A DNA stretch of 64,000 nucleotides, taken from positions 62,001-126,000 of IMG/VR virus record IMGVR_UViG_3300028384_001500; one strand, 5' to 3'. Below the pieces are notes generated by a model. It saw only the letters and a list, made by a program, of their open reading frames with translations. It did no database searches and was not told the origin of the DNA. Positions 1,564 through 64,000 of this stretch are shown here, in pieces (the stretch's first letter is position 1; the number at the start of each line of letters is the position of its first letter). The position numbers and the translations under genes were made by a program.

Positions 1564-1833
1564 CTAATCCTCGTCTTCTATCATATTAAATATACTTTCA
1601 ACATCTGATTTACTAAAACTTTTATTTGATTTTTGCTTCTTTTCTTCGACAACATCATCTAAAAACTTTAACATTTTATTGTCTTCAATTTCAATTCTCT
1701 TTGCAAAAGCTTCAACAACTTCTTGCATTGATAGGCTTCTTGCTGCACAAGCCATTTTTAGAGCTGTGTGGCTGTCTTTTGTCAGGCTAAAATGAACTGA
1801 CTTTTTAACAAGAACATTATATTTTGAAGACAT
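1564..1833 (-). CDS. Ribbon-helix-helix DNA-binding protein
   Basis: KSVHFSL beta strand, helix HTALKMACAARS, then LSMQEVVEAF. Confidence 0.6.
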   Translation of the reverse strand: MSSKYNVLVKKSVHFSLTKDSHTALKMACAARSLSMQEVVEAFAKRIEIEDNKMLKFLDDVVEEKKQKSNKSFSKSDVESIFNMIEDED

Positions 1834-1834
1834 A

Positions 1835-2440
1835 TTAACCCCCTACAGATCCTGCGCCGGCAGGATTTGCACCCACAGCTAATGGTACATCTTCTGCATA
1901 ATCTACGTCAAACTCTTCAACAGTAATACCAAATTGTTCTTCAAGGATATCTAGATAGGCTGATACAAATCTATCACCATAGTTTTCATCAAGAAAGTTT
2001 TTTGCTCTATTGACAATTGCAGTCTCTACATCTAAAAGTTTTCGATAATTCATAATTAATCTTGCAACTTTAATTGTAAACTTATCAATGTCTAAGTCAG
2101 GAACTCTTTCTTTTTCGGCAGCGTCAGCCGTCATTTCTTCTGATCCGGAAGGTTCTGTTACACCGGCATCATCCTCAATAGGCTCTTCTGCCGGTTCTTC
2201 TTCAGCGCCTTCTTCTTGTTCTAAGAGCATTCGAAGAGATCCTTTAAATAACGCTTCCATCAAGGCATCTTCTTCGTCTCTGATTGCTCTTTTTTCATAC
2301 AATAAGATTAAGGAGTCAATTTGGTCATCGACACTGTCAGCTGACTTTCTAGCTTTTGCATCACCTGAAGATTTCACTTTGCCTTCTGGCGCGTCTTTTG
2401 ACTCTTCATCTTGTTCAAATAAAAACTTTGTTAAGTTCAT
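1835..2440 (-). CDS. Acidic hypothetical protein, possible prohead core/scaffold
   Basis: Several L-x-E sites (LFEQ, LMEA, LLEQ, ILEE) and E/D-rich linkers; late operon context. Confidence 0.35.
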   Translation of the reverse strand: MNLTKFLFEQDEESKDAPEGKVKSSGDAKARKSADSVDDQIDSLILLYEKRAIRDEEDALMEALFKGSLRMLLEQEEGAEEEPAEEPIEDDAGVTEPSGSEEMTADAAEKERVPDLDIDKFTIKVARLIMNYRKLLDVETAIVNRAKNFLDENYGDRFVSAYLDILEEQFGITVEEFDVDYAEDVPLAVGANPAGAGSVGG

Positions 2441-2441
2441 T

Positions 2442-3119
2442 TTAACTCCTTAAAACTTGAATAATTTTATCTGCCTTTGCGATTCTTTCTTCAATAACAG
2501 GCCATCTTAAAAGCTTCATCATGGCACGTGTATATGTATCTACGTCTTTTAAATAGTCTCTATAATAAGCGTGTTGCCATGCGTCCATTACAATAATAGG
2601 ATAAGAACCAAAAGGGACGTTGTTTGTGTGTAAGTCTACAACTGCATTCATGTATGTTTGGGTATAAGTGTTTAGATAAGTTATTGCCCATCCGCATTGA
2701 GAAGCAGACATACAAGCCATAAAATCTTTTTGCCATGCATCAAAACTACCAAAGTCTCTTGCTAATCTCATGTATGCAAGCGAGTCCATTTTTATTTCTG
2801 AATGAGGATCACCAATATTTGAAAAATACAGCTCATGAAGATAAACACCATTCATATTAAAGGCTTCATCAAGCTTTAAAGAGCGAAATTCTGAGTGATT
2901 GCAGTTAACGTTTGATTTGTCAACTGTGTCTAACTTTGCACTAATTTTATTAAAGTTTTTTAAGTAACCTTGATAAAGTTCAACGTGATTTTGAAAATTA
3001 TCTTTACTTAAAAAGTCAGAGTTAAAAGTAAAAGACTTTTCTTGCGCGCTTAATGCTTCATTAAGATTTAATGTTTCTTTGATAATTTCTTTTGCTTTTT
3101 TACTAAAAAGATCTTTCAT
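2442..3119 (-). CDS. sod: Fe/Mn superoxide dismutase
   Basis: Ligands NHVELY, LHELYF, D-A-W-Q-H-A-Y-Y; FGSFDAW and GWA motifs. Confidence 0.9.
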   Translation of the reverse strand: MKDLFSKKAKEIIKETLNLNEALSAQEKSFTFNSDFLSKDNFQNHVELYQGYLKNFNKISAKLDTVDKSNVNCNHSEFRSLKLDEAFNMNGVYLHELYFSNIGDPHSEIKMDSLAYMRLARDFGSFDAWQKDFMACMSASQCGWAITYLNTYTQTYMNAVVDLHTNNVPFGSYPIIVMDAWQHAYYRDYLKDVDTYTRAMMKLLRWPVIEERIAKADKIIQVLRS

Positions 3120-3359
3120 TTAAACTGCCTCGTATTCACTAAACTCTTTTTCAGGTATTTGAACATAAACTTTTTTATTGTCACCTGGCTTACTATAATA
3201 TCTATAAGCAATAATTAAAGGTTTGCCGTTTTCAAAAGTAATTTTTTTAATTGTATATTCTATTTTTGTAGGCTTATGTCTTATTAAAAGATGATTAGAC
3301 AACATTGAAATTGTCTTTCCCTTCTTTTTTGTAATACCTTTTTTTAAATTTTCTTTCAT
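3120..3359 (-). CDS. Hypothetical protein
   Basis: ORF abutting sod; ATAATTA motif upstream. Confidence 0.6.
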   Translation of the reverse strand: MKENLKKGITKKKGKTISMLSNHLLIRHKPTKIEYTIKKITFENGKPLIIAYRYYSKPGDNKKVYVQIPEKEFSEYEAV

Positions 3360-56889: not shown

Positions 56890-59800
56890 CTATTTGTTGT
56901 TTTTACCTGTTGACTTTAAAGAATATGCACCTTTTTCCCTAAAGTTAAACTCAGCCTGATTTCCTCCGTCACTATAAACGTCACCTGAAACATTACGCAT
57001 AATTTCACCAACGTTGTAAAGAGGTGCTTTATTATAACCACTATGATCAAGACCAGGAGGAATGTCATGAATAACATCAAAACTAAAAGATATTTTACAT
57101 CCCATAGGTGCACGAGCGCCATAATCAACTTCCCATGGAAAATTATCTAACCAGTTAAAGTTAATGCCACCCATAACACCTGCCAATCCTCGCCCTCTTG
57201 TAGTTTCTATAGCCCTTACAAAAGGATTGTTTTCCGGTCTCATAAATAAAGAAGTATCTGAAGCGTAAAGTGTTCTGACAAAATCAACTACTTCGTTAGG
57301 AACACCTACACCCTGGGACCATTCTGTACTTAAATTAAGTGCTGAATCTATTACACCTGTCGGGTCTGTTAAGAAAAGTGAAGCGCCAACAATACTAGTG
57401 TTAAAAAGCTCTTTAGGGTCTGGTAATATATCGTGATGAGACACAATCAAATACGTTTCTTTTAACTCTTTTGGTGCATTACCATCTGTCACTTTAACTT
57501 TATAGCCAATTGTATTTGCTGGTAATCCTTCAAAGTCTGTTCCTTTTTCTACAACCCTTATTTTTAGTCTTCTACTCACAAGAAACTTTTTACCTGTCTC
57601 GGCATAATAACCATTAACGACATTAGGTTTAAGTATCATCCTTCTGAAAGCACTAACGATTCCTGTCGTATTGTACCCACCTGATATGTTGTTGCCTGTT
57701 GTAGGATTATAAAGAGAGCTATTGTCAATATTTCTCCTTAGTTTACCTAATGTAGTTCCAGAAACGCCTACGTCAGTTAAATTTGGGTCTCTCAGTTGTC
57801 TAACTATTCCGCCTACAGCAAGCGGATTTGCATAACCGTTTACTAAAAAATTAGACAACAACTGTATAACAGCGCCTTTTCCAGCTTTCATTGCTGATTT
57901 AGCTATTTGACTTCCAGGAGTTTCAGCGCTATTAAAAGCTGTTGTAACTATTGAATGCGGGCTTCCAAATAAAGCTAGCCAAGTTTTTAAAACAACCTCT
58001 TGAGCCTGGTTCATATCATCAATAGCAGCACTGTCATTTATACCTTGTTTTAAAAGAGAAGACTCTTCAGGTCTTACACTAACGTTACCATCACCAATAC
58101 CAAACGTTCTTGCCAGCGCAAATCTAGAATAATTTGACTTAATAACATCACCAATGCGCAAACGAACAATAGGGGAAGCACCAATTACCTGACTAAAAGG
58201 CATGTAAAATTTACTGTCTCCTGACTCAGAGTTAGAAACCATAGATCCGGCAGTCCATTGCGGGTATAATAGTGTCACTAATTTATTTATCTTATACCAC
58301 ATCGCATCAAAGTCTTCTCTATTAGTGGCAAAAAGAGTAAATCCTACACTCAAACTCCTGCTAGTGCTTTTATATATTTGAACTGCATCCATACGACCGT
58401 AACCATCGACCTTGTTAAAGTTAGGAGATATCTGATCTGTTAGTGTGTCTAAAAATGCATTAAAAGAAATAATTTCGTTAGTTCTAAGGTCTTGAATATA
58501 GAACGGTACATACTCAGCATCAAGTTTATCTTCAAGTACTTTTACCACTTCGTTAGGAATTCTATTATAAGATCCGTCAACGTCGATACCAGTGAAGGTA
58601 TTTTTGACTAATTTTGATCCAAACATGCCTCTAACAGGACTAGCTCCATATACAGTATTGTTAAGTTTTGATGCAGCTCTAATTATATTTGCTGGAAGTA
58701 TGTACATAGAAGGTGTACTATCTTGAGACCAACTTAACTCATTTTTATTCATACCAAATTTCTTTCTAGACTTGTGAACAGCTGCTTCGTCCGGGTATGA
58801 GTCTACATCTCTAAGTGTTTTAAAGTCTTGTTCAGCATTTTTAACACCTGAGGTTGTCTGTAAGCTAATATCACCTATAACTGCCATGGCATTAAAAAAT
58901 CTAATAAACTTGTTATTCTCTAAAAGATCTTTATAGACAATAAAAAGATCGTTTTCGTCCATAGGTTCGTTAAGGCTGCTAGTTCTACCCACAACTGTCT
59001 CATATGTTTTAAGAACAGATTTTGCCACTGCTAACCAAAAACCAGGTGCTTGACCCAACACTCTGCTTTTAATTATTTTTTCTTCATCATCTGATTTAAA
59101 GTCTTTGCCTAATATAACCTCAAGCCCTCTGTCTATCGCATCACCAAGCGGATAAGTTGTATTTGTCAGGACATTTGAAAAAATATGATTATCTATTTTT
59201 AAAGAAGCTAGCTTTCTTGAACGACCTAGCATATAAGCACCAATGTCAACTTTGCTATTTTCTGATAAGTAAGCCTCAGCCGAAGACTGAAGATCAAATT
59301 TATCTTCTTCTCTAAGAATATTTATAAAACTATCAAAAAACGACTTACCAATATTTTTTAAAGCAATTAGTGCTATAGCAGCTTGTATTTTATGTAACTT
59401 GAGTGATTGACCTGAAAACCTAAATACACTATTGTAAGTTGCCCCAAAAGTCTGATTACTTTCAGCGCCTGCTTCATTTTCAATTATTTCACCTCGACCG
59501 GCTCTAATTGACTCGCCACTTACTTCTTCTGGAAAACCCTTCGCATTTTTGGCTCTAACATTGCTAAAATTAACTTTGGTTAACCCAGAAGATTTACCTA
59601 GGTTACTACCTATTTCATTGTTAAAGATTTGATCAGAGACATCTGTGATATCGCCAGAACTACTAGGGGAGTCTCCGAGATCAAAACCCGTACTTTTAAA
59701 AAGAAGACTAGCTGCCAAAGACTTTAGCTCGTTAATGCTAACAATATTACCATCTACTTCATATTCACCAAACTTATTTTGAGGATTTAGTGTACCACGA

Positions 59801-60426
59801 TTGTCAACCTTGTCTGACGTCTCAAAGTCTTCTGGTCTTTGTGGTTTAACTGTAAAAGATGTTCTTTTTTCATCCCCTACATTAGCAAATCTATTGTTTT
59901 TTAAAAACATTTTTTGAGTTGCTTGCACAATATCATTATTAACACCATTTGGGTTAGTTAGTGTCATTCCTGAATTGCTTAGGCTAGTACCTAGTACGTC
60001 TTTAAGTTTATCGTTATTTTGGTCATTCTGATTAACTTTATCAATTAGTGTAGATAAGGGTGTTCCGGAATCATCAAATTTACCGCTATTACTATACTCA
60101 TTAAGTTTTGACTTTAAAACAGTACCTTGCTTAATAAAAACTTCTTCTGCAGATGACGTATCTGCAATAGGAATTTGATCGCCTTTGTTGTTTCTATTAC
60201 CTAGCGAGTTTCCGCCTTTTAACTTGTAATTGTTTGACGATCCGTCTACAATATGTTTAAGGTAATCACCTAACAGACCGCTAATTTCATTAGATAAATC
60301 TAATAACTCTTCACCAGTTCCAGGTTCAATTCCAACTCCGTCCGGAGCATCTTTAAGTGTAATTGTTATACTATCTTTTGTAGAGCCTCTTTGTGTAAGA
60401 AAGTCTTTAAGTGTTTCTCTTGACAA
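56890..60426 (-). CDS. Large baseplate / tube-initiator-like protein
   Basis: FNAFLDTLTD...YGRMDAVQIYKSTSRSLSVGFTL...KINKL...YP; between tape measure and LysM genes. Confidence 0.6.
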   Translation of the reverse strand: MSRETLKDFLTQRGSTKDSITITLKDAPDGVGIEPGTGEELLDLSNEISGLLGDYLKHIVDGSSNNYKLKGGNSLGNRNNKGDQIPIADTSSAEEVFIKQGTVLKSKLNEYSNSGKFDDSGTPLSTLIDKVNQNDQNNDKLKDVLGTSLSNSGMTLTNPNGVNNDIVQATQKMFLKNNRFANVGDEKRTSFTVKPQRPEDFETSDKVDNRGTLNPQNKFGEYEVDGNIVSINELKSLAASLLFKSTGFDLGDSPSSSGDITDVSDQIFNNEIGSNLGKSSGLTKVNFSNVRAKNAKGFPEEVSGESIRAGRGEIIENEAGAESNQTFGATYNSVFRFSGQSLKLHKIQAAIALIALKNIGKSFFDSFINILREEDKFDLQSSAEAYLSENSKVDIGAYMLGRSRKLASLKIDNHIFSNVLTNTTYPLGDAIDRGLEVILGKDFKSDDEEKIIKSRVLGQAPGFWLAVAKSVLKTYETVVGRTSSLNEPMDENDLFIVYKDLLENNKFIRFFNAMAVIGDISLQTTSGVKNAEQDFKTLRDVDSYPDEAAVHKSRKKFGMNKNELSWSQDSTPSMYILPANIIRAASKLNNTVYGASPVRGMFGSKLVKNTFTGIDVDGSYNRIPNEVVKVLEDKLDAEYVPFYIQDLRTNEIISFNAFLDTLTDQISPNFNKVDGYGRMDAVQIYKSTSRSLSVGFTLFATNREDFDAMWYKINKLVTLLYPQWTAGSMVSNSESGDSKFYMPFSQVIGASPIVRLRIGDVIKSNYSRFALARTFGIGDGNVSVRPEESSLLKQGINDSAAIDDMNQAQEVVLKTWLALFGSPHSIVTTAFNSAETPGSQIAKSAMKAGKGAVIQLLSNFLVNGYANPLAVGGIVRQLRDPNLTDVGVSGTTLGKLRRNIDNSSLYNPTTGNNISGGYNTTGIVSAFRRMILKPNVVNGYYAETGKKFLVSRRLKIRVVEKGTDFEGLPANTIGYKVKVTDGNAPKELKETYLIVSHHDILPDPKELFNTSIVGASLFLTDPTGVIDSALNLSTEWSQGVGVPNEVVDFVRTLYASDTSLFMRPENNPFVRAIETTRGRGLAGVMGGINFNWLDNFPWEVDYGARAPMGCKISFSFDVIHDIPPGLDHSGYNKAPLYNVGEIMRNVSGDVYSDGGNQAEFNFREKGAYSLKSTGKNNK

Positions 60427-60657
60427 TTATAACTCCTTAATACTATCTAAAATTAACTTTTTAAAGTTATCTCTTTTCTTCTTATTTTCTAAAATATTTT
60501 TTTGTGCGTCCAATACAGGAGAAAACGATGTAATCATCTCTGTTATATAAGTATCTATAACTTTAAGTTCATCTTGTGACAAATTTAAACCAAGCACATA
60601 ATCATATACTTCTTTTTTGATATGTTCTGATAAATTAAGTTTTTGACGTTGTTGCAT
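60427..60657 (-). CDS. Hypothetical protein
   Basis: Coupled ORF in the tail operon. Confidence 0.5.
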   Translation of the reverse strand: MQQRQKLNLSEHIKKEVYDYVLGLNLSQDELKVIDTYITEMITSFSPVLDAQKNILENKKKRDNFKKLILDSIKEL

Positions 60658-62545
60658 AAACTATTCCTTCGTCTGTTTCTATTTGATAAATTCCTGTTTT
60701 AACTAACCCCTTCGCGTCAATAGTCACATTTGTTGTAGGTTGGAGGTTTATAGAAAAAGCGCCACCCATTAAATTTTTATTTAATGTTTTTAATTCTTCT
60801 TCTGTATTAGCGCTAGACTCAGCTACTTTTTCTTGTGATTCATTAGCTTTTGTTTCAACTTGTTCAGTAATGACTGTATTAGTAGGTTTAACAGGCTCTG
60901 GATTTTTCGGTGCGGGAGGACCTACAAACTCATCTTTTTCAATGCCAGCATAACTTAAACCTACGTTAACACCCTCAGCTCCTAGTTCACCTGCAAGGTT
61001 AGCTAATTGTCCCAATTGAGTAATTGTTTGGGAACCAATACTATTAACCACTTTTTCAGTCTTTTGCAAAGATATGATCGCATTATCTAACGCAGCTTGG
61101 CTTAGTCTAAATTGTCCTATTGCTTTACCTGGTAATTCACCTGCTGCTTCTCTAGTACGAATAATATTTCTTGCAACTTCGTCAGAAAATGTTGCCTGCA
61201 TTCTTAATGACTTTTCAAACTCATGGGCACCTCTATACGCACCTTCATAAGCACCACCAAAATTCTCAATTGCAGTCGCCATACCGTCCATTGTTTCTGC
61301 TTCAGTTGTTGCTGCTTCTAATCCCATTTGATCAACTTGAAGTTCACCATCTCTCATAAACTGTCGCATCTGTTCAACATTCATATTTAGCTGTCCAGCC
61401 AAAGCTCTCTGTCTAGTTTTGGACATGTTTTCTACGTCTAGTCCGGCATCAAGAATTTCCTCTCTCATTCTGAATAAAAATTCTTCTTGATCTTCATTAG
61501 CCAGATATGTCATTTCCATAGCATCCATTTGAATTCCAAATAGCGCTGAAAGGTCGCCCATTTTTTGTGCAGCACTATCAAAATTCATAAACTGATTTGT
61601 CATGTTTTGAAATGTTTGAAAATCCAACCCTAGTTGATTTAATGCGCCTGCGATTCTAGCAGCAGAATCTACACCAATATCTCCAAATTTTTCTGTATCT
61701 TGCATAATATCAAGAATATTAGCTTGCAAAGTTTCTGCTGCAGCACCAGTTGCTTTTCCAACAGATACAGCTGCAGCTGCAACGTCCTCTATAATTTGAG
61801 CAGAAGCTTCACCGGAAAAGGCATATTGTCTTCTTAGAATATTACCCATCGTATTAGATTCAATATTCATACGTTTAGAAAGAATAGCAATTCTCTCAGC
61901 TTCTTCCTCACCGAGTTCTTTTAAAGACATTGACAAGCTTACATTTTCAGCTGAGACGTCTACTAAAACATCTTTAAATAAATTAGCAGCCTCAACAGGA
62001 TCTTTAAATAGTTCTATTAGTGCATTTTTTCCTTTAAGAGCTCCTGATTCTATTTCTAAAGCTGAGTCTTTTCCATTAGCACTGACTAATCCTAAATGTT
62101 GTGCCGCCTCTAATGCTTGGCCCGAAACCCCGCTTAAGGCTTCACCTGAAGCGTATGCAGCCTCTGTTATGCCGCCAAAAGTTTTTTGAACTTGTCGAAA
62201 ATACAATACTTCGTCATCTAACTCTTTATTGTAGCTGCCTAATGCATTAAGGGCAATTTTTCCCATTTCCCCCACAGCTTTAAAAGATGCACCAAACACA
62301 GCTGTCGCATTTGCCGATACTGACTTAATAAACTTTTTATTTTTTTCGCTTTCAGATTCTCTTTCATCGTCTCTTTCATCACTAGAACTAGAAAAATCAA
62401 CGTCCGGAACGGTGTCATCACTACCTGAAGTAGATGTCGTGTCACCCGGTGAACTTGATCTTCTACCGGTGAACAGTCTTGAAACACTAGGGTCGGACAT
62501 AGCTTCTATAAAAGCTTCTTTAATTTCGTCTTTTGTAATTGACAT
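60635..62545 (-). CDS. Tape measure protein
   Basis: Ala/Gly-rich helical; FMNFDSAAQKMGDLSALFG, LAGQL; follows the tail chaperones. Confidence 0.7.
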   Translation of the reverse strand: MSITKDEIKEAFIEAMSDPSVSRLFTGRRSSSPGDTTSTSGSDDTVPDVDFSSSSDERDDERESESEKNKKFIKSVSANATAVFGASFKAVGEMGKIALNALGSYNKELDDEVLYFRQVQKTFGGITEAAYASGEALSGVSGQALEAAQHLGLVSANGKDSALEIESGALKGKNALIELFKDPVEAANLFKDVLVDVSAENVSLSMSLKELGEEEAERIAILSKRMNIESNTMGNILRRQYAFSGEASAQIIEDVAAAAVSVGKATGAAAETLQANILDIMQDTEKFGDIGVDSAARIAGALNQLGLDFQTFQNMTNQFMNFDSAAQKMGDLSALFGIQMDAMEMTYLANEDQEEFLFRMREEILDAGLDVENMSKTRQRALAGQLNMNVEQMRQFMRDGELQVDQMGLEAATTEAETMDGMATAIENFGGAYEGAYRGAHEFEKSLRMQATFSDEVARNIIRTREAAGELPGKAIGQFRLSQAALDNAIISLQKTEKVVNSIGSQTITQLGQLANLAGELGAEGVNVGLSYAGIEKDEFVGPPAPKNPEPVKPTNTVITEQVETKANESQEKVAESSANTEEELKTLNKNLMGGAFSINLQPTTNVTIDAKGLVKTGIYQIETDEGIVYATTSKT

Positions 62546-62571: not shown

Positions 62572-62842
62572 CTATGTTCCTAACTTATTTTTAATACCAG
62601 CTTCAAACTTATTTAGCATATCCATTTGGTTGTTACTATTACGATTTTTATTTCCACCGCTTCTAGCATCTTCAAATGCTTTGTTTTTATCGTCAAAATG
62701 TTTAACAAGTCGGCGTAGAAACCAAGTACGATACCGTATTGGTAACTTATGCACCTCTGAATATGACATGTTAAGGTGAAGCTGGAGGGCGAAGAATTCT
62801 TCTAGTATGTCTTCTCTCCAACTATGTACTGGGCCAAAAAAA
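62572..62842 (-). CDS. Tail chaperone extension (gpT-like), probably reached by frameshift
   Basis: EEFFALQLHLNMSYSEVHKLPIRYRTWFL; overlaps the end of the upstream chaperone at a T7 run. Confidence 0.6.
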
Positions 62843-63625
62843 CTCCGAATTAATCGGAAGCCCCATGTCATTATAATGATCGCAATTACTGCAATTATAC
62901 TTCCAGCGCATATCAATGCCTGGTTCAGTATCTTTGATATGTTTTCTTAGTTTTCTACTATCCATTGCCGGCATATTTAAAACAAAATGCTTGATTTTAT
63001 TTTTATCTGTAATACCATCAATAGAAACAATTGTATTTTCTAAATAACTGGTAACAGAGTTATTATAAACTACACCCGCTGCTTTAAGTCTTTTTTCTGT
63101 AATTTCAATTTCTTTTTGATCATGCCCAGTTAAAAGTTTAAATTTTACTTCTTTTTTTGTAACAGGTAACACATAGGAAAATAAGTTTTTACCAGGCTCT
63201 ACTGGGTTTTCACTAAGGCGCCTAATAGATAACTGACTTAAGTCTACATCGACTTTGTTGTTTTTTCCGCACTTTTGACAATTGTGTTTTACTTTGTAGT
63301 CTGTACCATAACCTGTGATTCTAATAGAAACCATCAAAGAGTTTCTGTCGCCATCAATCATGTCGTTAACATTAATTGTTTTGTTAATCAAACAAGATTC
63401 AATAAGCTTTTCAATTACTGTACCATCTTTAATGTATGCCTGACTAGAAAGAATGTCTTCTTCACGCGCTGTCATTGCCTTTATTTGTAGGGTTTCTGTA
63501 TTATGTAAAATAGAGTCTGGGTGGTAAATTACTCCTTTTGACGGAAGAGGTACACTCTCAACTGGAACCTCCCATCCAAATTCGTCTTTTATAACGTTAC
63601 TACGTGGAATCATGTCATTGTTCAT
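62822..63625 (-). CDS. T4 gp26-like tail/baseplate assembly chaperone
   Basis: VPLPSKG, KAMTAREEDIL, GDRNSLMVSIRITGYG, CQKC and CSNC, ends EFFWP. Confidence 0.8.
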   Translation of the reverse strand: MNNDMIPRSNVIKDEFGWEVPVESVPLPSKGVIYHPDSILHNTETLQIKAMTAREEDILSSQAYIKDGTVIEKLIESCLINKTINVNDMIDGDRNSLMVSIRITGYGTDYKVKHNCQKCGKNNKVDVDLSQLSIRRLSENPVEPGKNLFSYVLPVTKKEVKFKLLTGHDQKEIEITEKRLKAAGVVYNNSVTSYLENTIVSIDGITDKNKIKHFVLNMPAMDSRKLRKHIKDTEPGIDMRWKYNCSNCDHYNDMGLPINSEFFWPST

Positions 63626-63704: not shown

Positions 63705-64000
63705 TTAGAACTGTAGTACACAATTGTCAACTTCTAGCGTTAAAGAAACTTTCATTAAGTCAGTTCCATCATAAGATAGACTTCCAAAGTTTGCTGATTG
63801 AATAATTGCACCTTTAATATCCCAAAGCTCAACAACTGTACCAATTGGATCTAACATTTTAAGTTGAAGATCACGCTTATAAAAATCAGCGTACCCTGCA
63901 CGACCTGAAACTGATTCGTAATGTGTTCTAACCCACTCCATAACTTGTTGCGCGCCTGATGGTGCAATTGGGTCATGAAGATCAACTGATATCGAGCCCC
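63705..64000 (-). CDS. Tail tube protein (gp19-like), partial, runs off the right edge
   Basis: The frame stays open upstream of the track start: DLHDPIAPSGAQQVMEWVR...GRAGYADFYKRD...W.IKGA. Confidence 0.85.
   Translation of the reverse strand, partial: GSISVDLHDPIAPSGAQQVMEWVRTHYESVSGRAGYADFYKRDLQLKMLDPIGTVVELWDIKGAIIQSANFGSLSYDGTDLMKVSLTLEVDNCVLQF

What the first reader, a model, noticed from the sequence alone, without database searches (positions are those of the whole stretch)
62572..62860. Probable programmed +1/-2 frameshift at a U7 run in the tail chaperone
Seen: GAG UUU UUU UGG CCC AGU ACA UAG ends the gp26-like ORF (T7 at 62836-62842). The overlapping frame reads UUU UUU GGC CCA GUA into a gpT-like segment that has no good start of its own, directly upstream of the tape measure gene. 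Known: lambda G-T uses a -1 shift and Mu a -2 shift at this genomic position. Inference: a T4-like gp26 homologue uses a non -1 shift, which supports its role as a G/GT-type chaperone.
Basis: partly seen in the sequence, partly recalled or inferred. Interest (0 to 1): 0.6.

Follow-up and report, generated by a model that had tools for sequence, protein, structure and literature searches.

The report
Frameshifted tail chaperone of a phage
A large uncultured phage appears to make a short and a long form of its tail-assembly chaperone (a relative of T4 gp26/gp51) by shifting into the +1 frame at a run of seven U's just before the tape-measure gene; this is a well-supported but ordinary example of a known phage trick.

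Summary
On the minus strand a 267-aa gp26-like ORF (PF12322) ends GAG TTT TTT TGG CCC AGT ACA TAG, with T7 at 62836-62842. An open frame displaced by +1 (equivalently -2) overlaps it and runs 87 codons further, to just before the tape-measure gene.

Comparative evidence supports recoding:
- All 16 marine relatives, 85 further IMG/VR loci and 8 GenBank phages carry the homologous extension in the +1 frame.
- In many of them that frame opens only 5 codons before the run and holds no start codon.
- Codon-position variability switches from the 0 frame to the +1 frame at this point, including the stretch before the first ATG.

Seven jumbo phages encode the same extension in the -1 frame, behind U_UUU_UUY heptamers at the same Phe-Phe codons.

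T4 has two paralogs instead. The gp26-like ORF matches both gp26 and the N-terminal domain of gp51, and the extension weakly resembles the gp51 C-terminus.

The gp26-like model has two domains whose best structural matches are tail assembly chaperones (Z 5.2-5.7, weak).

The most likely mechanism is a +1 ribosomal slip of tRNA-Phe on UUU_U. Transcriptional slippage, a -2 shift and a CCC_A site are not excluded.

Novelty is low. [quoted passage not shown]

The parts
63705..64000 (-). 3' part of the tail tube gene (gp19-like). The full gene encodes 163 aa and runs beyond the window end.
   Evidence: phrog_4542 tail tube at 5.9e-14 and a weak PF06841 hit. The full ORF is seen in L033, preceded by a sheath-like ORF.
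62822..63625 (-). 0-frame ORF of 267 aa: gp26-like tail assembly chaperone, short form (TAC-N). It has four invariant Cys (C116, C119, C245, C248) forming a predicted zinc ribbon.
   Evidence: PF12322 at 2.5e-17 and phrog_150. AF2 model pLDDT 86.7. Residues 15-110 match the HK97 TAC 2ob9 (Z 5.2) and residues 144-234 match YqbN 3klu (Z 5.7). Invariant Cys.
62836..62842 (-). U7 run (TTT TTT T), the proposed shift site. Both Phe codons are UUU followed by U, so tRNA-Phe can re-pair one base downstream.
   Evidence: TTTTTTTGGCC is invariant in 13 distinct relatives of 55-73% protein identity.
62830..62833 (-). CCC_A, an alternative +1 site (tRNA-Pro moving from CCC to CCA), four codons before the stop.
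   Evidence: It is the only re-pairing site available in the L116-L120 clade. It is absent (CCT GAC) in L018 and in the immuto clade.
62822..62824 (-). 0-frame stop codon TAG, four codons after the run.
   Evidence: The stop is kept at this position in the relatives, switching from TAG to TGA where the +1-frame residue changes from Ser to Asp.
62572..62835 (-). +1-frame extension: 87 codons from GGC to the TAG stop (62574-62572), a helical domain. The predicted fusion product is 350 aa.
   Evidence: Conserved as protein in the +1 frame. AF2 gives helices 5-23, 27-31, 35-61 and 72-86, pLDDT 78. Fusion read. Related to the T4 gp51 C-terminus.
62767..62769 (-). First ATG of the +1 frame after the run (residue 25 of the extension). 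This is the start that gene callers use for a 63-66-aa ORF.
   Evidence: The 22 residues before it are conserved, with third-position variability 0.30 against 0.15 and 0.12.
60635..62545 (-). Probable tape measure protein, 636 aa.
   Evidence: It occupies the position of the annotated tape measure in immuto, HSE3 and LIS04. Atlas features match PF10145/TMP_3 at 0.92. Pfam TMP_2 at E 0.009 is below the cut-off. It shows no sequence similarity to the immuto tape measure.

Best explanation

Most ribosomes read GAG UUU UUU UGG CCC AGU ACA UAG to the stop and release the 267-aa short form. A minority shift one base forward within the U7 run. Peptidyl-tRNA-Phe on UUU re-pairs with the UUU that starts one base downstream. 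The next codon read is GGC, and translation continues for 87 more codons in the +1 frame. The result is a 350-aa long form with junction ..S-E-F-F-G-P-V-H...

By analogy with lambda gpG/gpGT, both forms would coat the tape measure through the shared gp26-like part. The helical extension, which is homologous to the C-terminal domain of T4 gp51, would add a second contact needed for hub or tube assembly.

Shown here:
- the frames
- the absence of a conserved start for the extension
- protein-level selection on the extension
- family membership of the first ORF
- synteny
- the same arrangement in more than 100 related loci

Inferred, not shown:
- that the ribosome rather than the RNA polymerase slips
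- the exact codon at which it slips
- the ratio of the two forms
- what the extension binds
For: 1. Frame conservation.
- The extension lies in the +1 frame in all 16 close relatives.
- It is in the +1 frame in 85 of 85 further IMG/VR loci, where the extension HMM hits only that frame.
- It is in the +1 frame in 8 GenBank phages of Flavobacterium, Microcystis, Bacillus, Streptococcus, Listeria and Streptomyces and one megaphage.

2. No independent start.
- In L004, L007/L008, L009, L016 and L019 the +1 frame opens 5 codons before the run and holds no ATG, GTG or TTG.
- In HSE3 the window in which a shift can occur is 10 codons.
- 20 of 79 immuto-like loci also lack any start there.

3. Selection.
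- Third-position variability is 0.40 in the 0 frame upstream of the run.
- It moves to the third position of the +1 frame downstream (0.34), including the 54 nt before the first ATG (0.30 against 0.15 and 0.12).

4. A +1 re-pairing site is present in nearly every member.
- Sites seen: UUU_U, UUU_C or CUU_U.
- The first Phe codon is always TTT in the 79 immuto-like loci, while the next codon varies between TTT, CTT and CTA.
- Variants without any run (TTC TTT CGT, CTG TTT CGC, TTT CTA TGG) rule out -2 and transcriptional slippage for those members.

5. The extension is one ancient domain.
- hhalign gives 96%, 88%, 85% and 88% between clade profiles.
- An HMM built from +1 members alone finds the -1 frame stretch of three jumbo phages at 3e-10 to 2e-5.

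6. Chaperone identity.
- Sheath-tube-X-tape measure synteny holds throughout.
- The two best structural matches out of 48,161 chains are YqbN and the HK97 tail assembly chaperone.

7. T4 parallel.
- T4 gp26 (208 aa) and gp51 (249 aa) both match PF12322.
- The gp51 C-terminus aligns with the extension core.
- The Atlas places the extension next to a cluster carrying Pfam Gp51_C.
Against:
- The nucleotide invariance of the run is largely explained by the Phe-Phe-Trp-Pro residues plus a 122:11 TTT:TTC bias. It is therefore weak evidence for a selected slip site.
- No conserved stimulator was found. The GGAG just 5' of the run in the window is not kept in relatives. The 3' consensus fold is only -5.96 kcal/mol with one compensatory pair.
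- The host is unknown, so UGG cannot be shown to be slowly decoded.
- A second possible site (CCC_A) lies in the same shift window.
- The chaperone-fold matches are weak (Z below 6). The tool itself warns that such values can reflect common arrangements.
Confidence: 0.6

Rival explanations
1. Transcriptional slippage. RNA polymerase drops one U (or adds two) on the T7 tract, so a fraction of mRNAs carry the extension in frame. The protein products are identical to those of a +1 (or -2) ribosomal shift.
For: - The window clade keeps an uninterrupted T7 in all 13 distinct sequences.
- Members that need -1 also carry T6-T9 tracts at the same place. A tract that serves both directions is natural for polymerase slippage.
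- The title of Vladimirov et al. 2022 mentions a non-translational mechanism. That paper was not readable here, and the phrase may refer instead to T4's two separate genes.
Against: - About half of the immuto-like clade, and also HSE3, GXN1, BRock, LR756508, L118 and L116-L120, have no run longer than three T's. They still keep the extension in +1.
- As far as I know, runs of 7 are at the low end for bacterial polymerase slippage.
- The -1 members all fit the ribosomal X_XXY_YYZ register.
Confidence: 0.15
2. A -2 ribosomal shift in the U7 run. tRNA-Phe on the second UUU slides back two bases, giving junction E-F-F-F-G-P (351 aa).
For: The run allows perfect re-pairing two bases back. The frame reached is the same as +1.
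Against: - Relatives with TTC TTT CGT, CTG TTT CGC or TTT CTA cannot re-pair at -2, yet use the same frame.
- A -2 shift needs a larger displacement than +1, and no stimulator was found.
Confidence: 0.07
3. A +1 ribosomal shift at CCC_A (62833-62830) rather than in the U-run. tRNA-Pro moves from CCC to CCA, giving junction E-F-F-W-P-V-H.
For: - CCC followed by A, C or N is present in most of the window clade, in HSE3, GXN1 and L115.
- It is the only usable site in L116-L120, where the Phe codons read TTA TTT or TTA TTC.
Against: L018 (same clade, 53% identity) and the whole immuto clade have CCT GAC, which cannot re-pair. There only the UUU_Y site remains.
Confidence: 0.08
4. No fusion. The extension is made on its own from an internal start (Met25, or a non-canonical codon), or by termination-reinitiation. 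Alternatively the T7 is an assembly error in a single long ORF.
For: - Gene callers do-66-aa proteins from Met25.
- The window itself has an upstream TTG and ATG in the +1 frame.
- HSE3 has an annotated ATG-started ORF.
Against: - The 22 residues before Met25 are conserved as protein.
- The upstream starts seen in the window are replaced by stop codons in most relatives.
- The same frame offset recurs in more than 100 independent assemblies and isolates, which excludes a homopolymer sequencing error.
Confidence: 0.05

Closest known systems
Phage T4 gp26 and gp51 (hub assembly chaperones; Pfam PF12322, with Gp51_C for the gp51 tail)
   Same: The window's 0-frame ORF belongs to the same Pfam family as both T4 proteins, down to the E-F-F motif at the end of gp26. 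The +1 extension resembles the extra C-terminal 48 aa of gp51. The short and long products therefore correspond to gp26 and gp51.
   Different: T4 encodes the two forms as two diverged, divergently transcribed genes. It has no overlap or recoding, its gene 26 is followed by gene 25, and the genes do not lie between the tube and tape-measure genes. A profile of the extension finds nothing in the T4 genome at E <= 1, so the gp51 link rests on weak evidence.
Lambda gpG/gpGT and the conserved tail-chaperone frameshift (Levin 1993; Xu, Hendrix and Duda 2004, 2013, 2014, as summarised in PMC5009743)
   Same: Two overlapping ORFs lie immediately upstream of the tape measure. [quoted passage not shown] Both products are expected to be assembly factors absent from the virion.
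   Different: Lambda shifts -1 on G_GGA_AAG; this phage shifts +1 (or -2) on a U-run. There is no sequence similarity to gpG or gpT. The protein is about twice as long, with two chaperone-like domains and a four-Cys zinc ribbon.
Predicted +1 chaperone frameshift of HF1-group and HSTV-2 haloarchaeal myoviruses (PMC7230728; PMC5009743)
   Same: In these myoviruses two CDS lie between tube and tape measure. A +1 shift is required, and a TTT-CGC motif sits close to the stop of the first CDS. HSE3, GXN1, L115, L118 and BRock carry the same UUU_CGN motif here.
   Different: These are archaeal viruses. I did not test whether their first CDS is in PF12322. The window has UUU_UGG within a U7 run rather than UUU_CGN.
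Jumbo phages XacN1, CM1, RsoM2USA, Serratia BF, E. coli A4, Atu_ph07 and megaphage LR756511
   Same: They have a homologous gp26-like gene and a homologous extension, with the shift at the same Phe-Phe codons in a U-run.
   Different: The extension is in the -1 frame behind classical U_UUU_UUY/A heptamers. In several of these phages the gene is not next to a tape measure.
+1 P-site slippage sites: prfB CUU_UGA, influenza PA-X UUU_CGU, and E. coli UUU_Y sites (own knowledge; PA-X and amalgaviruses as cited in PMC7230728)
   Same: A Phe or Leu tRNA re-pairs one base downstream on UUU_Y or CUU_U.
   Different: The window has no stop or known rare codon in the A site. The upstream Shine-Dalgarno-like GGAG is not conserved.

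Membership tests
Pfam PF12322 T4_baseplate (gp26/gp51) | Profile match above the curated gathering score | tested here: met
   63.7 bits against 24.5, covering residues 42-264 and model positions 12-219. T4 gp26 and gp51 score 215.6 and 177.5 bits.
Pfam PF12322 T4_baseplate (gp26/gp51) | Two CxxC pairs (zinc ribbon) and a C-terminal Phe-Phe motif | tested here: met
   C116, C119, C245, C248, F262 and F263 are invariant in 12 sequences. T4 gp26 ends KEFFELL. Structural matches to zinc ribbons have Z 3-3.8.
G/GT-type tail assembly chaperone with programmed frameshift (Xu et al. 2004) | Position between the tail tube (major tail) gene and the tape measure gene | tested here: met
   Window order is sheath-tube-gp26-like-extension-636-aa tape-measure-like ORF. 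The same order holds in immuto, Mel-JY01, HSE3, SP-15, LIS04 and BRock.
G/GT-type tail assembly chaperone with programmed frameshift (Xu et al. 2004) | A second ORF overlapping the end of the first in another frame, without a conserved start, conserved as protein | tested here: met
G/GT-type tail assembly chaperone with programmed frameshift (Xu et al. 2004) | A slippery sequence in the overlap that allows tRNA re-pairing in the required direction | tested here: met
   UUU_U in the window; UUU_Y or CUU_U in nearly all +1 relatives; U_UUU_UUY in all seven -1 relatives. Exception: L116-L120 have only CCC_A.
G/GT-type tail assembly chaperone with programmed frameshift (Xu et al. 2004) | Tail assembly chaperone fold | tested here: inconclusive
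   The best two of 48,161 chains are YqbN 3klu (Z 5.7, rmsd 3.6, 83 aligned) and the HK97 chaperone 2ob9 (Z 5.2, rmsd 3.5, 82 aligned). The next unrelated row in the second look is Z 3.6. Foldseek finds nothing at E <= 0.001, and no Pfam chaperone family matches.
G/GT-type tail assembly chaperone with programmed frameshift (Xu et al. 2004) | Both short and fused products made in a fixed ratio; bind tape measure and tube; absent from virions | not testable with these tools
The complex prediction gave no verdict.
prfB-type +1 programmed ribosomal frameshift | Slow A-site codon (stop or rare codon) and an upstream Shine-Dalgarno-like stimulator | tested here: inconclusive
   The A-site codon would be UGG or UUU, and the host and its tRNA pool are unknown. 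No tRNA genes lie in the window. GGAG sits directly 5' of the run in the window only and is not conserved.
Programmed transcriptional slippage | A homopolymeric tract conserved wherever the recoding is conserved | tested here: not met
   T7 is kept in the window clade, but many relatives with the same +1 extension have TTT CTT, TTT CTA, TTC TTT C or TTA TTC. This does not exclude slippage in the window itself.

The most novel reading that the evidence does not exclude
The gp26/gp51 chaperone family may have moved repeatedly between three ways of making its long form, all at the same homologous Phe-Phe codons:
- a -1 shift on U_UUU_UUY (proteobacterial jumbo phages)
- a +1 shift on UUU_Y (the window's marine clade, Flavobacterium, cyanobacterial and Gram-positive phages)
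- gene duplication into gp26 and gp51 (T4)

If the +1 class and this three-way pattern are not already described in the 2022 paper that I could not read, the family would be a natural series for asking what sets the direction and efficiency of slippage on one U-run.
Probability: 0.3. Interest if true: 0.55.

Novelty: new member of a known kind. Interest (0 to 1): 0.35.

Why it matters
- Annotation. In every GenBank record examined, the extension is either missed or split off as a 'hypothetical protein', or a spurious ORF is called instead, and the gene is named 'baseplate hub subunit'. Reading it as one recoded chaperone gene corrects the annotation of a very common class of marine, freshwater and jumbo myoviruses.
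- T4 biology. It gives a simple account of why T4 has two paralogous, non-structural hub 'catalysts': gp26 would be the short form and gp51 the long form.
- Frameshifting. The family holds -1 and +1 sites at the same codons, which makes it a useful comparative set.
- None of this changes current concepts. Recoding in tail chaperone genes is textbook knowledge, and the T4-like chaperones have been published.

Tried and rejected
- Complex prediction of the extension with the tail tube protein gave no answer. It is not evidence for or against binding.
No reads were laid.
- A conserved RNA structure 3' of the run was not supported: -5.96 kcal/mol and one compensatory pair. The GAAGAATTCTTC palindrome is a by-product of Glu-Glu-Phe-Phe codons.
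- Fold search of the extension against PDB gave nothing usable; the best E-value was 2.5.
- The extension has no hit in Pfam or PHROGs.
- The word search for the extension found only 12 close proteins, mostly called from Met25.
- PF28602 (Gp51_C) is not in the local Pfam library, so the Atlas lead could not be scored.
- The extension profile finds nothing in the T4 genome at E <= 1.
- BLASTP of the 636-aa ORF against the immuto tape measure shows no similarity.
- blastn of the region against phage genomes found no match.
- A diverse alignment could not seed search for related loci, and the XacN1 query found no IMG/VR relatives.
- Vladimirov et al. 2022 could not be read. Its content is inferred from its title and one citing sentence.
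- An empirical null from the window's other gene ends was uninformative, because ordinary overlapping neighbour genes dominate it.
- The large protein-representative search was not used, since relatives were found through synteny.
Full report
**The observation**

All genes in this part of the window are on the minus strand. In order they are:
- the 3' part of a tail tube gene (63705 to the window end)
- a 267-aa ORF (63625..62822)
- an overlapping open frame ending at 62572
- a 636-aa ORF (62545..60635)

The 267-aa ORF ends GAG TTT TTT TGG CCC AGT ACA TAG. The overlapping frame is displaced by +1 (equivalently -2). It stays open for 41 codons before the stop and 83 after it. The -1 frame is closed.

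The 267-aa ORF matches Pfam PF12322 T4_baseplate (63.7 bits, cut-off 24.5) and PHROG 150 'baseplate hub'.

A T7 run as such is not unusual in this 35% G+C window. There are 60 on both strands, fewer than shuffling predicts. The case therefore has to rest on comparison with relatives.

The window is part of a 236,652-base IMG/VR virus record estimated to be 77% complete.

**Relatives**

tblastn against GenBank phages found 39 records, none above 37% identity. IMG/VR gave 16 closer loci at 55-73% identity.

All 16 keep TTTTTTTGGCC, a 0-frame stop four codons later, and the downstream ORF in the +1 frame. In L004, L007/L008, L009, L016 and L019 the +1 frame opens only five codons before the run, and those five codons include no ATG, GTG or TTG. 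The first ATG lies 24 codons into the extension.

Across 13 distinct sequences, per-codon-position variability is 0.20/0.14/0.40 in the 0 frame upstream of the run. Downstream it is 0.19/0.12/0.34 in the +1 frame. In the 54 nt before that first ATG it is 0.15/0.12/0.30. The stretch that no independent start could reach is therefore evolving as protein in the +1 frame.

More distant phages show the same layout, with sheath, tube, gp26-like gene, +1 extension and tape measure in order. These are Flavobacterium phage immuto, Microcystis phage Mel-JY01, Bacillus phages HSE3 and SP-15, Streptococcus phage GXN1, Listeria phage LIS04, Streptomyces phage BRock and megaphage LR756508.

Two further IMG/VR scans gave 85 analysable loci, 79 immuto-like and 6 HSE3-like. 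A profile of the extension hits the +1 frame, and only that frame, in all 85.

**The other direction**

Seven large phages have the homologous extension in the -1 frame: XacN1, Stenotrophomonas CM1, Ralstonia RsoM2USA, Serratia BF, E. coli A4, Agrobacterium Atu_ph07 and megaphage LR756511. In each, the gp26-like ORF carries a classical heptamer at the same Phe-Phe codons: T_TTT_TTT, T_TTT_TTC or a T9 run.

The extensions of the two groups align on a common core. Profile-profile probabilities between clades are 96%, 88%, 85% and 88%, but only 8% for the most distant pair compared directly. A profile built from +1 members alone finds the -1 frame stretch of three of the seven at 3e-10 to 2e-5, and no other frame.

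Recoding at this point is therefore old, and its direction has changed during evolution.

**Where and how the shift occurs**

Across the +1 members the site reads:
- TTT TTT TGG
- TTT CTT TGG
- TTT CTA TGG
- TTC TTT CGT
- TTT TTT CGT
- CTG TTT CGC
- TTT CTA TTC
- TTT TTT CAC
- TTT TTT AGT

The common element is UUU followed by U or C, or CUU followed by U. On these a Phe or Leu tRNA can re-pair one base downstream. In 79 immuto-like loci the first Phe codon is always TTT, while the second codon varies.

Roughly half of that clade, and several other lineages, have no homopolymer longer than three. That excludes -2 slippage and polymerase slippage as the general mechanism.

One small clade (L116-L120) has TTA TTT or TTA TTC and only CCC_A as a usable site. 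The window also has CCC_A, four codons before the stop. Its clade-mate L018 has CCT GAC, which cannot re-pair there.

For the window I therefore favour a +1 slip of tRNA-Phe within the U7 run, giving junction EFFGPVH and a 350-aa product.

Several cautions apply:
- The nucleotide invariance of the run follows largely from the Phe-Phe-Trp-Pro residues and a 122:11 preference for TTT over TTC. Even so, only 1 of 23 other codons with an invariant residue is itself invariant.
- The GGAG directly upstream is not conserved.
- No 3' structure is supported.
- The host, and so the abundance of its tRNA-Trp, is unknown. The window carries no tRNA genes.

**What the protein is**

The AlphaFold model of the gp26-like ORF is confident (pLDDT 86.7, pTM 0.81). 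Foldseek against PDB finds nothing significant.

An exhaustive alignment against 48,161 chains ranks these first:
- B. subtilis prophage protein YqbN (3klu): Z 5.7, rmsd 3.6, 83 residues, model residues 144-234
- HK97 tail assembly chaperone (2ob9): Z 5.2, rmsd 3.5, 82 residues, model residues 15-110
- two further small phage or prophage proteins (3fgx, 5ir0)
- zinc ribbons

The second look at Foldseek's own matches gives the same two on top, with the next row at Z 3.6.

To my knowledge YqbN belongs to the XkdN-like chaperone family; I did not test this. These Z values are low, so I treat them as a lead. The picture they suggest is two chaperone-like domains joined by a four-Cys zinc ribbon (C116, C119, C245 and C248 are invariant).

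Viral predicted structures that match are all annotated as baseplate hub subunit or hub assembly protein.

The extension is predicted as a helical domain (pLDDT 78). It has no PDB, Pfam or PHROG match.

**The T4 connection**

In T4, gene 26 (208 aa) ends KEFFELL and is followed directly by gene 25. There is no overlapping extension.

T4 gp51 (249 aa) matches the same Pfam family over residues 1-201, at 3.9e-52. Its remaining C-terminus contains a segment, [24 protein letters not shown], that aligns with the conserved core of the extension (hhalign P 0.003, weak).

Independently, the protein Atlas places the window's extension next to a cluster in which 30% of members carry Pfam PF28602 'Gp51_C' (score 0.92, 179 shared features). 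That family is not in the local Pfam copy, so I could not score it. A profile of the extension finds nothing in the T4 genome at E <= 1.

My reading is that the window's short product corresponds to gp26 and its frameshift product to gp51, and that T4 replaced recoding with two genes. Both T4 proteins are listed as hub assembly chaperones absent from the virion (PMC3004832). That fits a role as chaperones of the tape measure gp29.

**Prior knowledge**

- The conserved frameshift in tail chaperone genes, and the roles of lambda gpG and gpGT, are summarised in PMC5009743. That review also notes a likely +1 shift in the halovirus HSTV-2.
- PMC7230728 predicts a +1 shift at TTT-CGC between the tube and tape measure genes of HF1-group haloviruses. 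Several relatives here carry the same motif.
- A citing paper says that poly-T slippery sequences occur in the TAC-N genes of T4-like phages (PMC12846349).

I could not read the 2022 paper. I assume it covers the gp26/gp51 assignment, and I do not know whether it covers the +1 class.

None of the GenBank records I opened annotates the recoding. The extension is left unannotated, called as a small hypothetical protein, or replaced by a spurious ORF.

**Verdict**

The feature is a recoded tail assembly chaperone gene of the gp26/gp51 family, shifting into the +1 frame at or next to a U7 run.

I put recoding of some kind at about 0.9 and a +1 ribosomal slip in the run at about 0.6. The rivals are transcriptional slippage (0.15), the CCC_A site (0.08), a -2 shift (0.07) and no fusion (0.05).

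It is a new member of a known kind. Interest is modest, and comes mainly from better annotation and from the -1 / +1 / duplication series within one family.

Noticed in passing
L032 (T4 NC_000866) 1803-3229: T4 gp26 and gp51 both match PF12322. gp51 carries about 48 extra C-terminal residues whose core resembles the window's +1 extension. T4 thus seems to encode the short and long chaperone forms as two genes. T4 also annotates an in-frame internal start, 26'.
   Followed up: partly
L025-L028, L030, L031, L023 (RsoM2USA, CM1, BF, XacN1, A4, Atu_ph07, LR756511): The gp26-like genes of these jumbo phages end with U_UUU_UUY/A heptamers, and the homologous extension lies in the -1 frame. GenBank lists the extension as separate hypothetical proteins (for example BF_0247, A4_1, XacN1 ORF316). 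In BF, A4 and Atu_ph07 the gene is not next to a tape measure gene.
   Followed up: partly
L001 4839-4949 (immuto35A_232); L002 4734-4970: In phage immuto the annotated 36-aa CDS downstream of the gp26-like gene lies in the 0 frame and looks spurious, while the conserved +1 ORF is unannotated. In Mel-JY01 the +1 ORF was annotated from a TTG inside the overlap.
   Followed up: partly
L116-L120, about 1890-1925: A small clade reads TTA TTT or TTA TTC, then AAT CCC AGT AAG, then a stop. It has no U-run and no UUU_Y, yet keeps the extension in the +1 frame. CCC_A is the only re-pairing site available.
   Followed up: partly
window 62822-63625 (-): Four invariant cysteines in two CxxC pairs about 125 residues apart come together in the model as a zinc ribbon bridging the two chaperone-like halves. 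The known lambda-type chaperones do not have this feature.
   Followed up: partly
BFVD hits (for example phiRSL1 B2ZYI8, 384 aa; Motura A0A514CT42, 438 aa; G4KKH9, 475 aa): Some structural homologues are 380-475 aa long. They may be in-frame fusions of the gp26-like part with an extension or with other domains.
   Followed up: no
window 62340-62480 (-), N-terminus of the 636-aa ORF: The probable tape measure begins with a Ser/Asp/Glu-rich low-complexity stretch, roughly residues 25-70, before its Ala/Gly-rich helical body.
   Followed up: no
window 60427-60657 (-) and 56890-60426 (-): A 76-aa ORF overlaps the end of the tape-measure-like gene by 23 nt and abuts a 1178-aa ORF that is listed with a TTG start. 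Immuto also has a small ORF after its tape measure. Function unknown.
   Followed up: no
whole window: Of the 60 T7 matches, only 13 are T7 on the coding (minus) strand. The other 47 are A7 in the mRNA sense. All large ORFs in the 64 kb lie on the minus strand.
   Followed up: no
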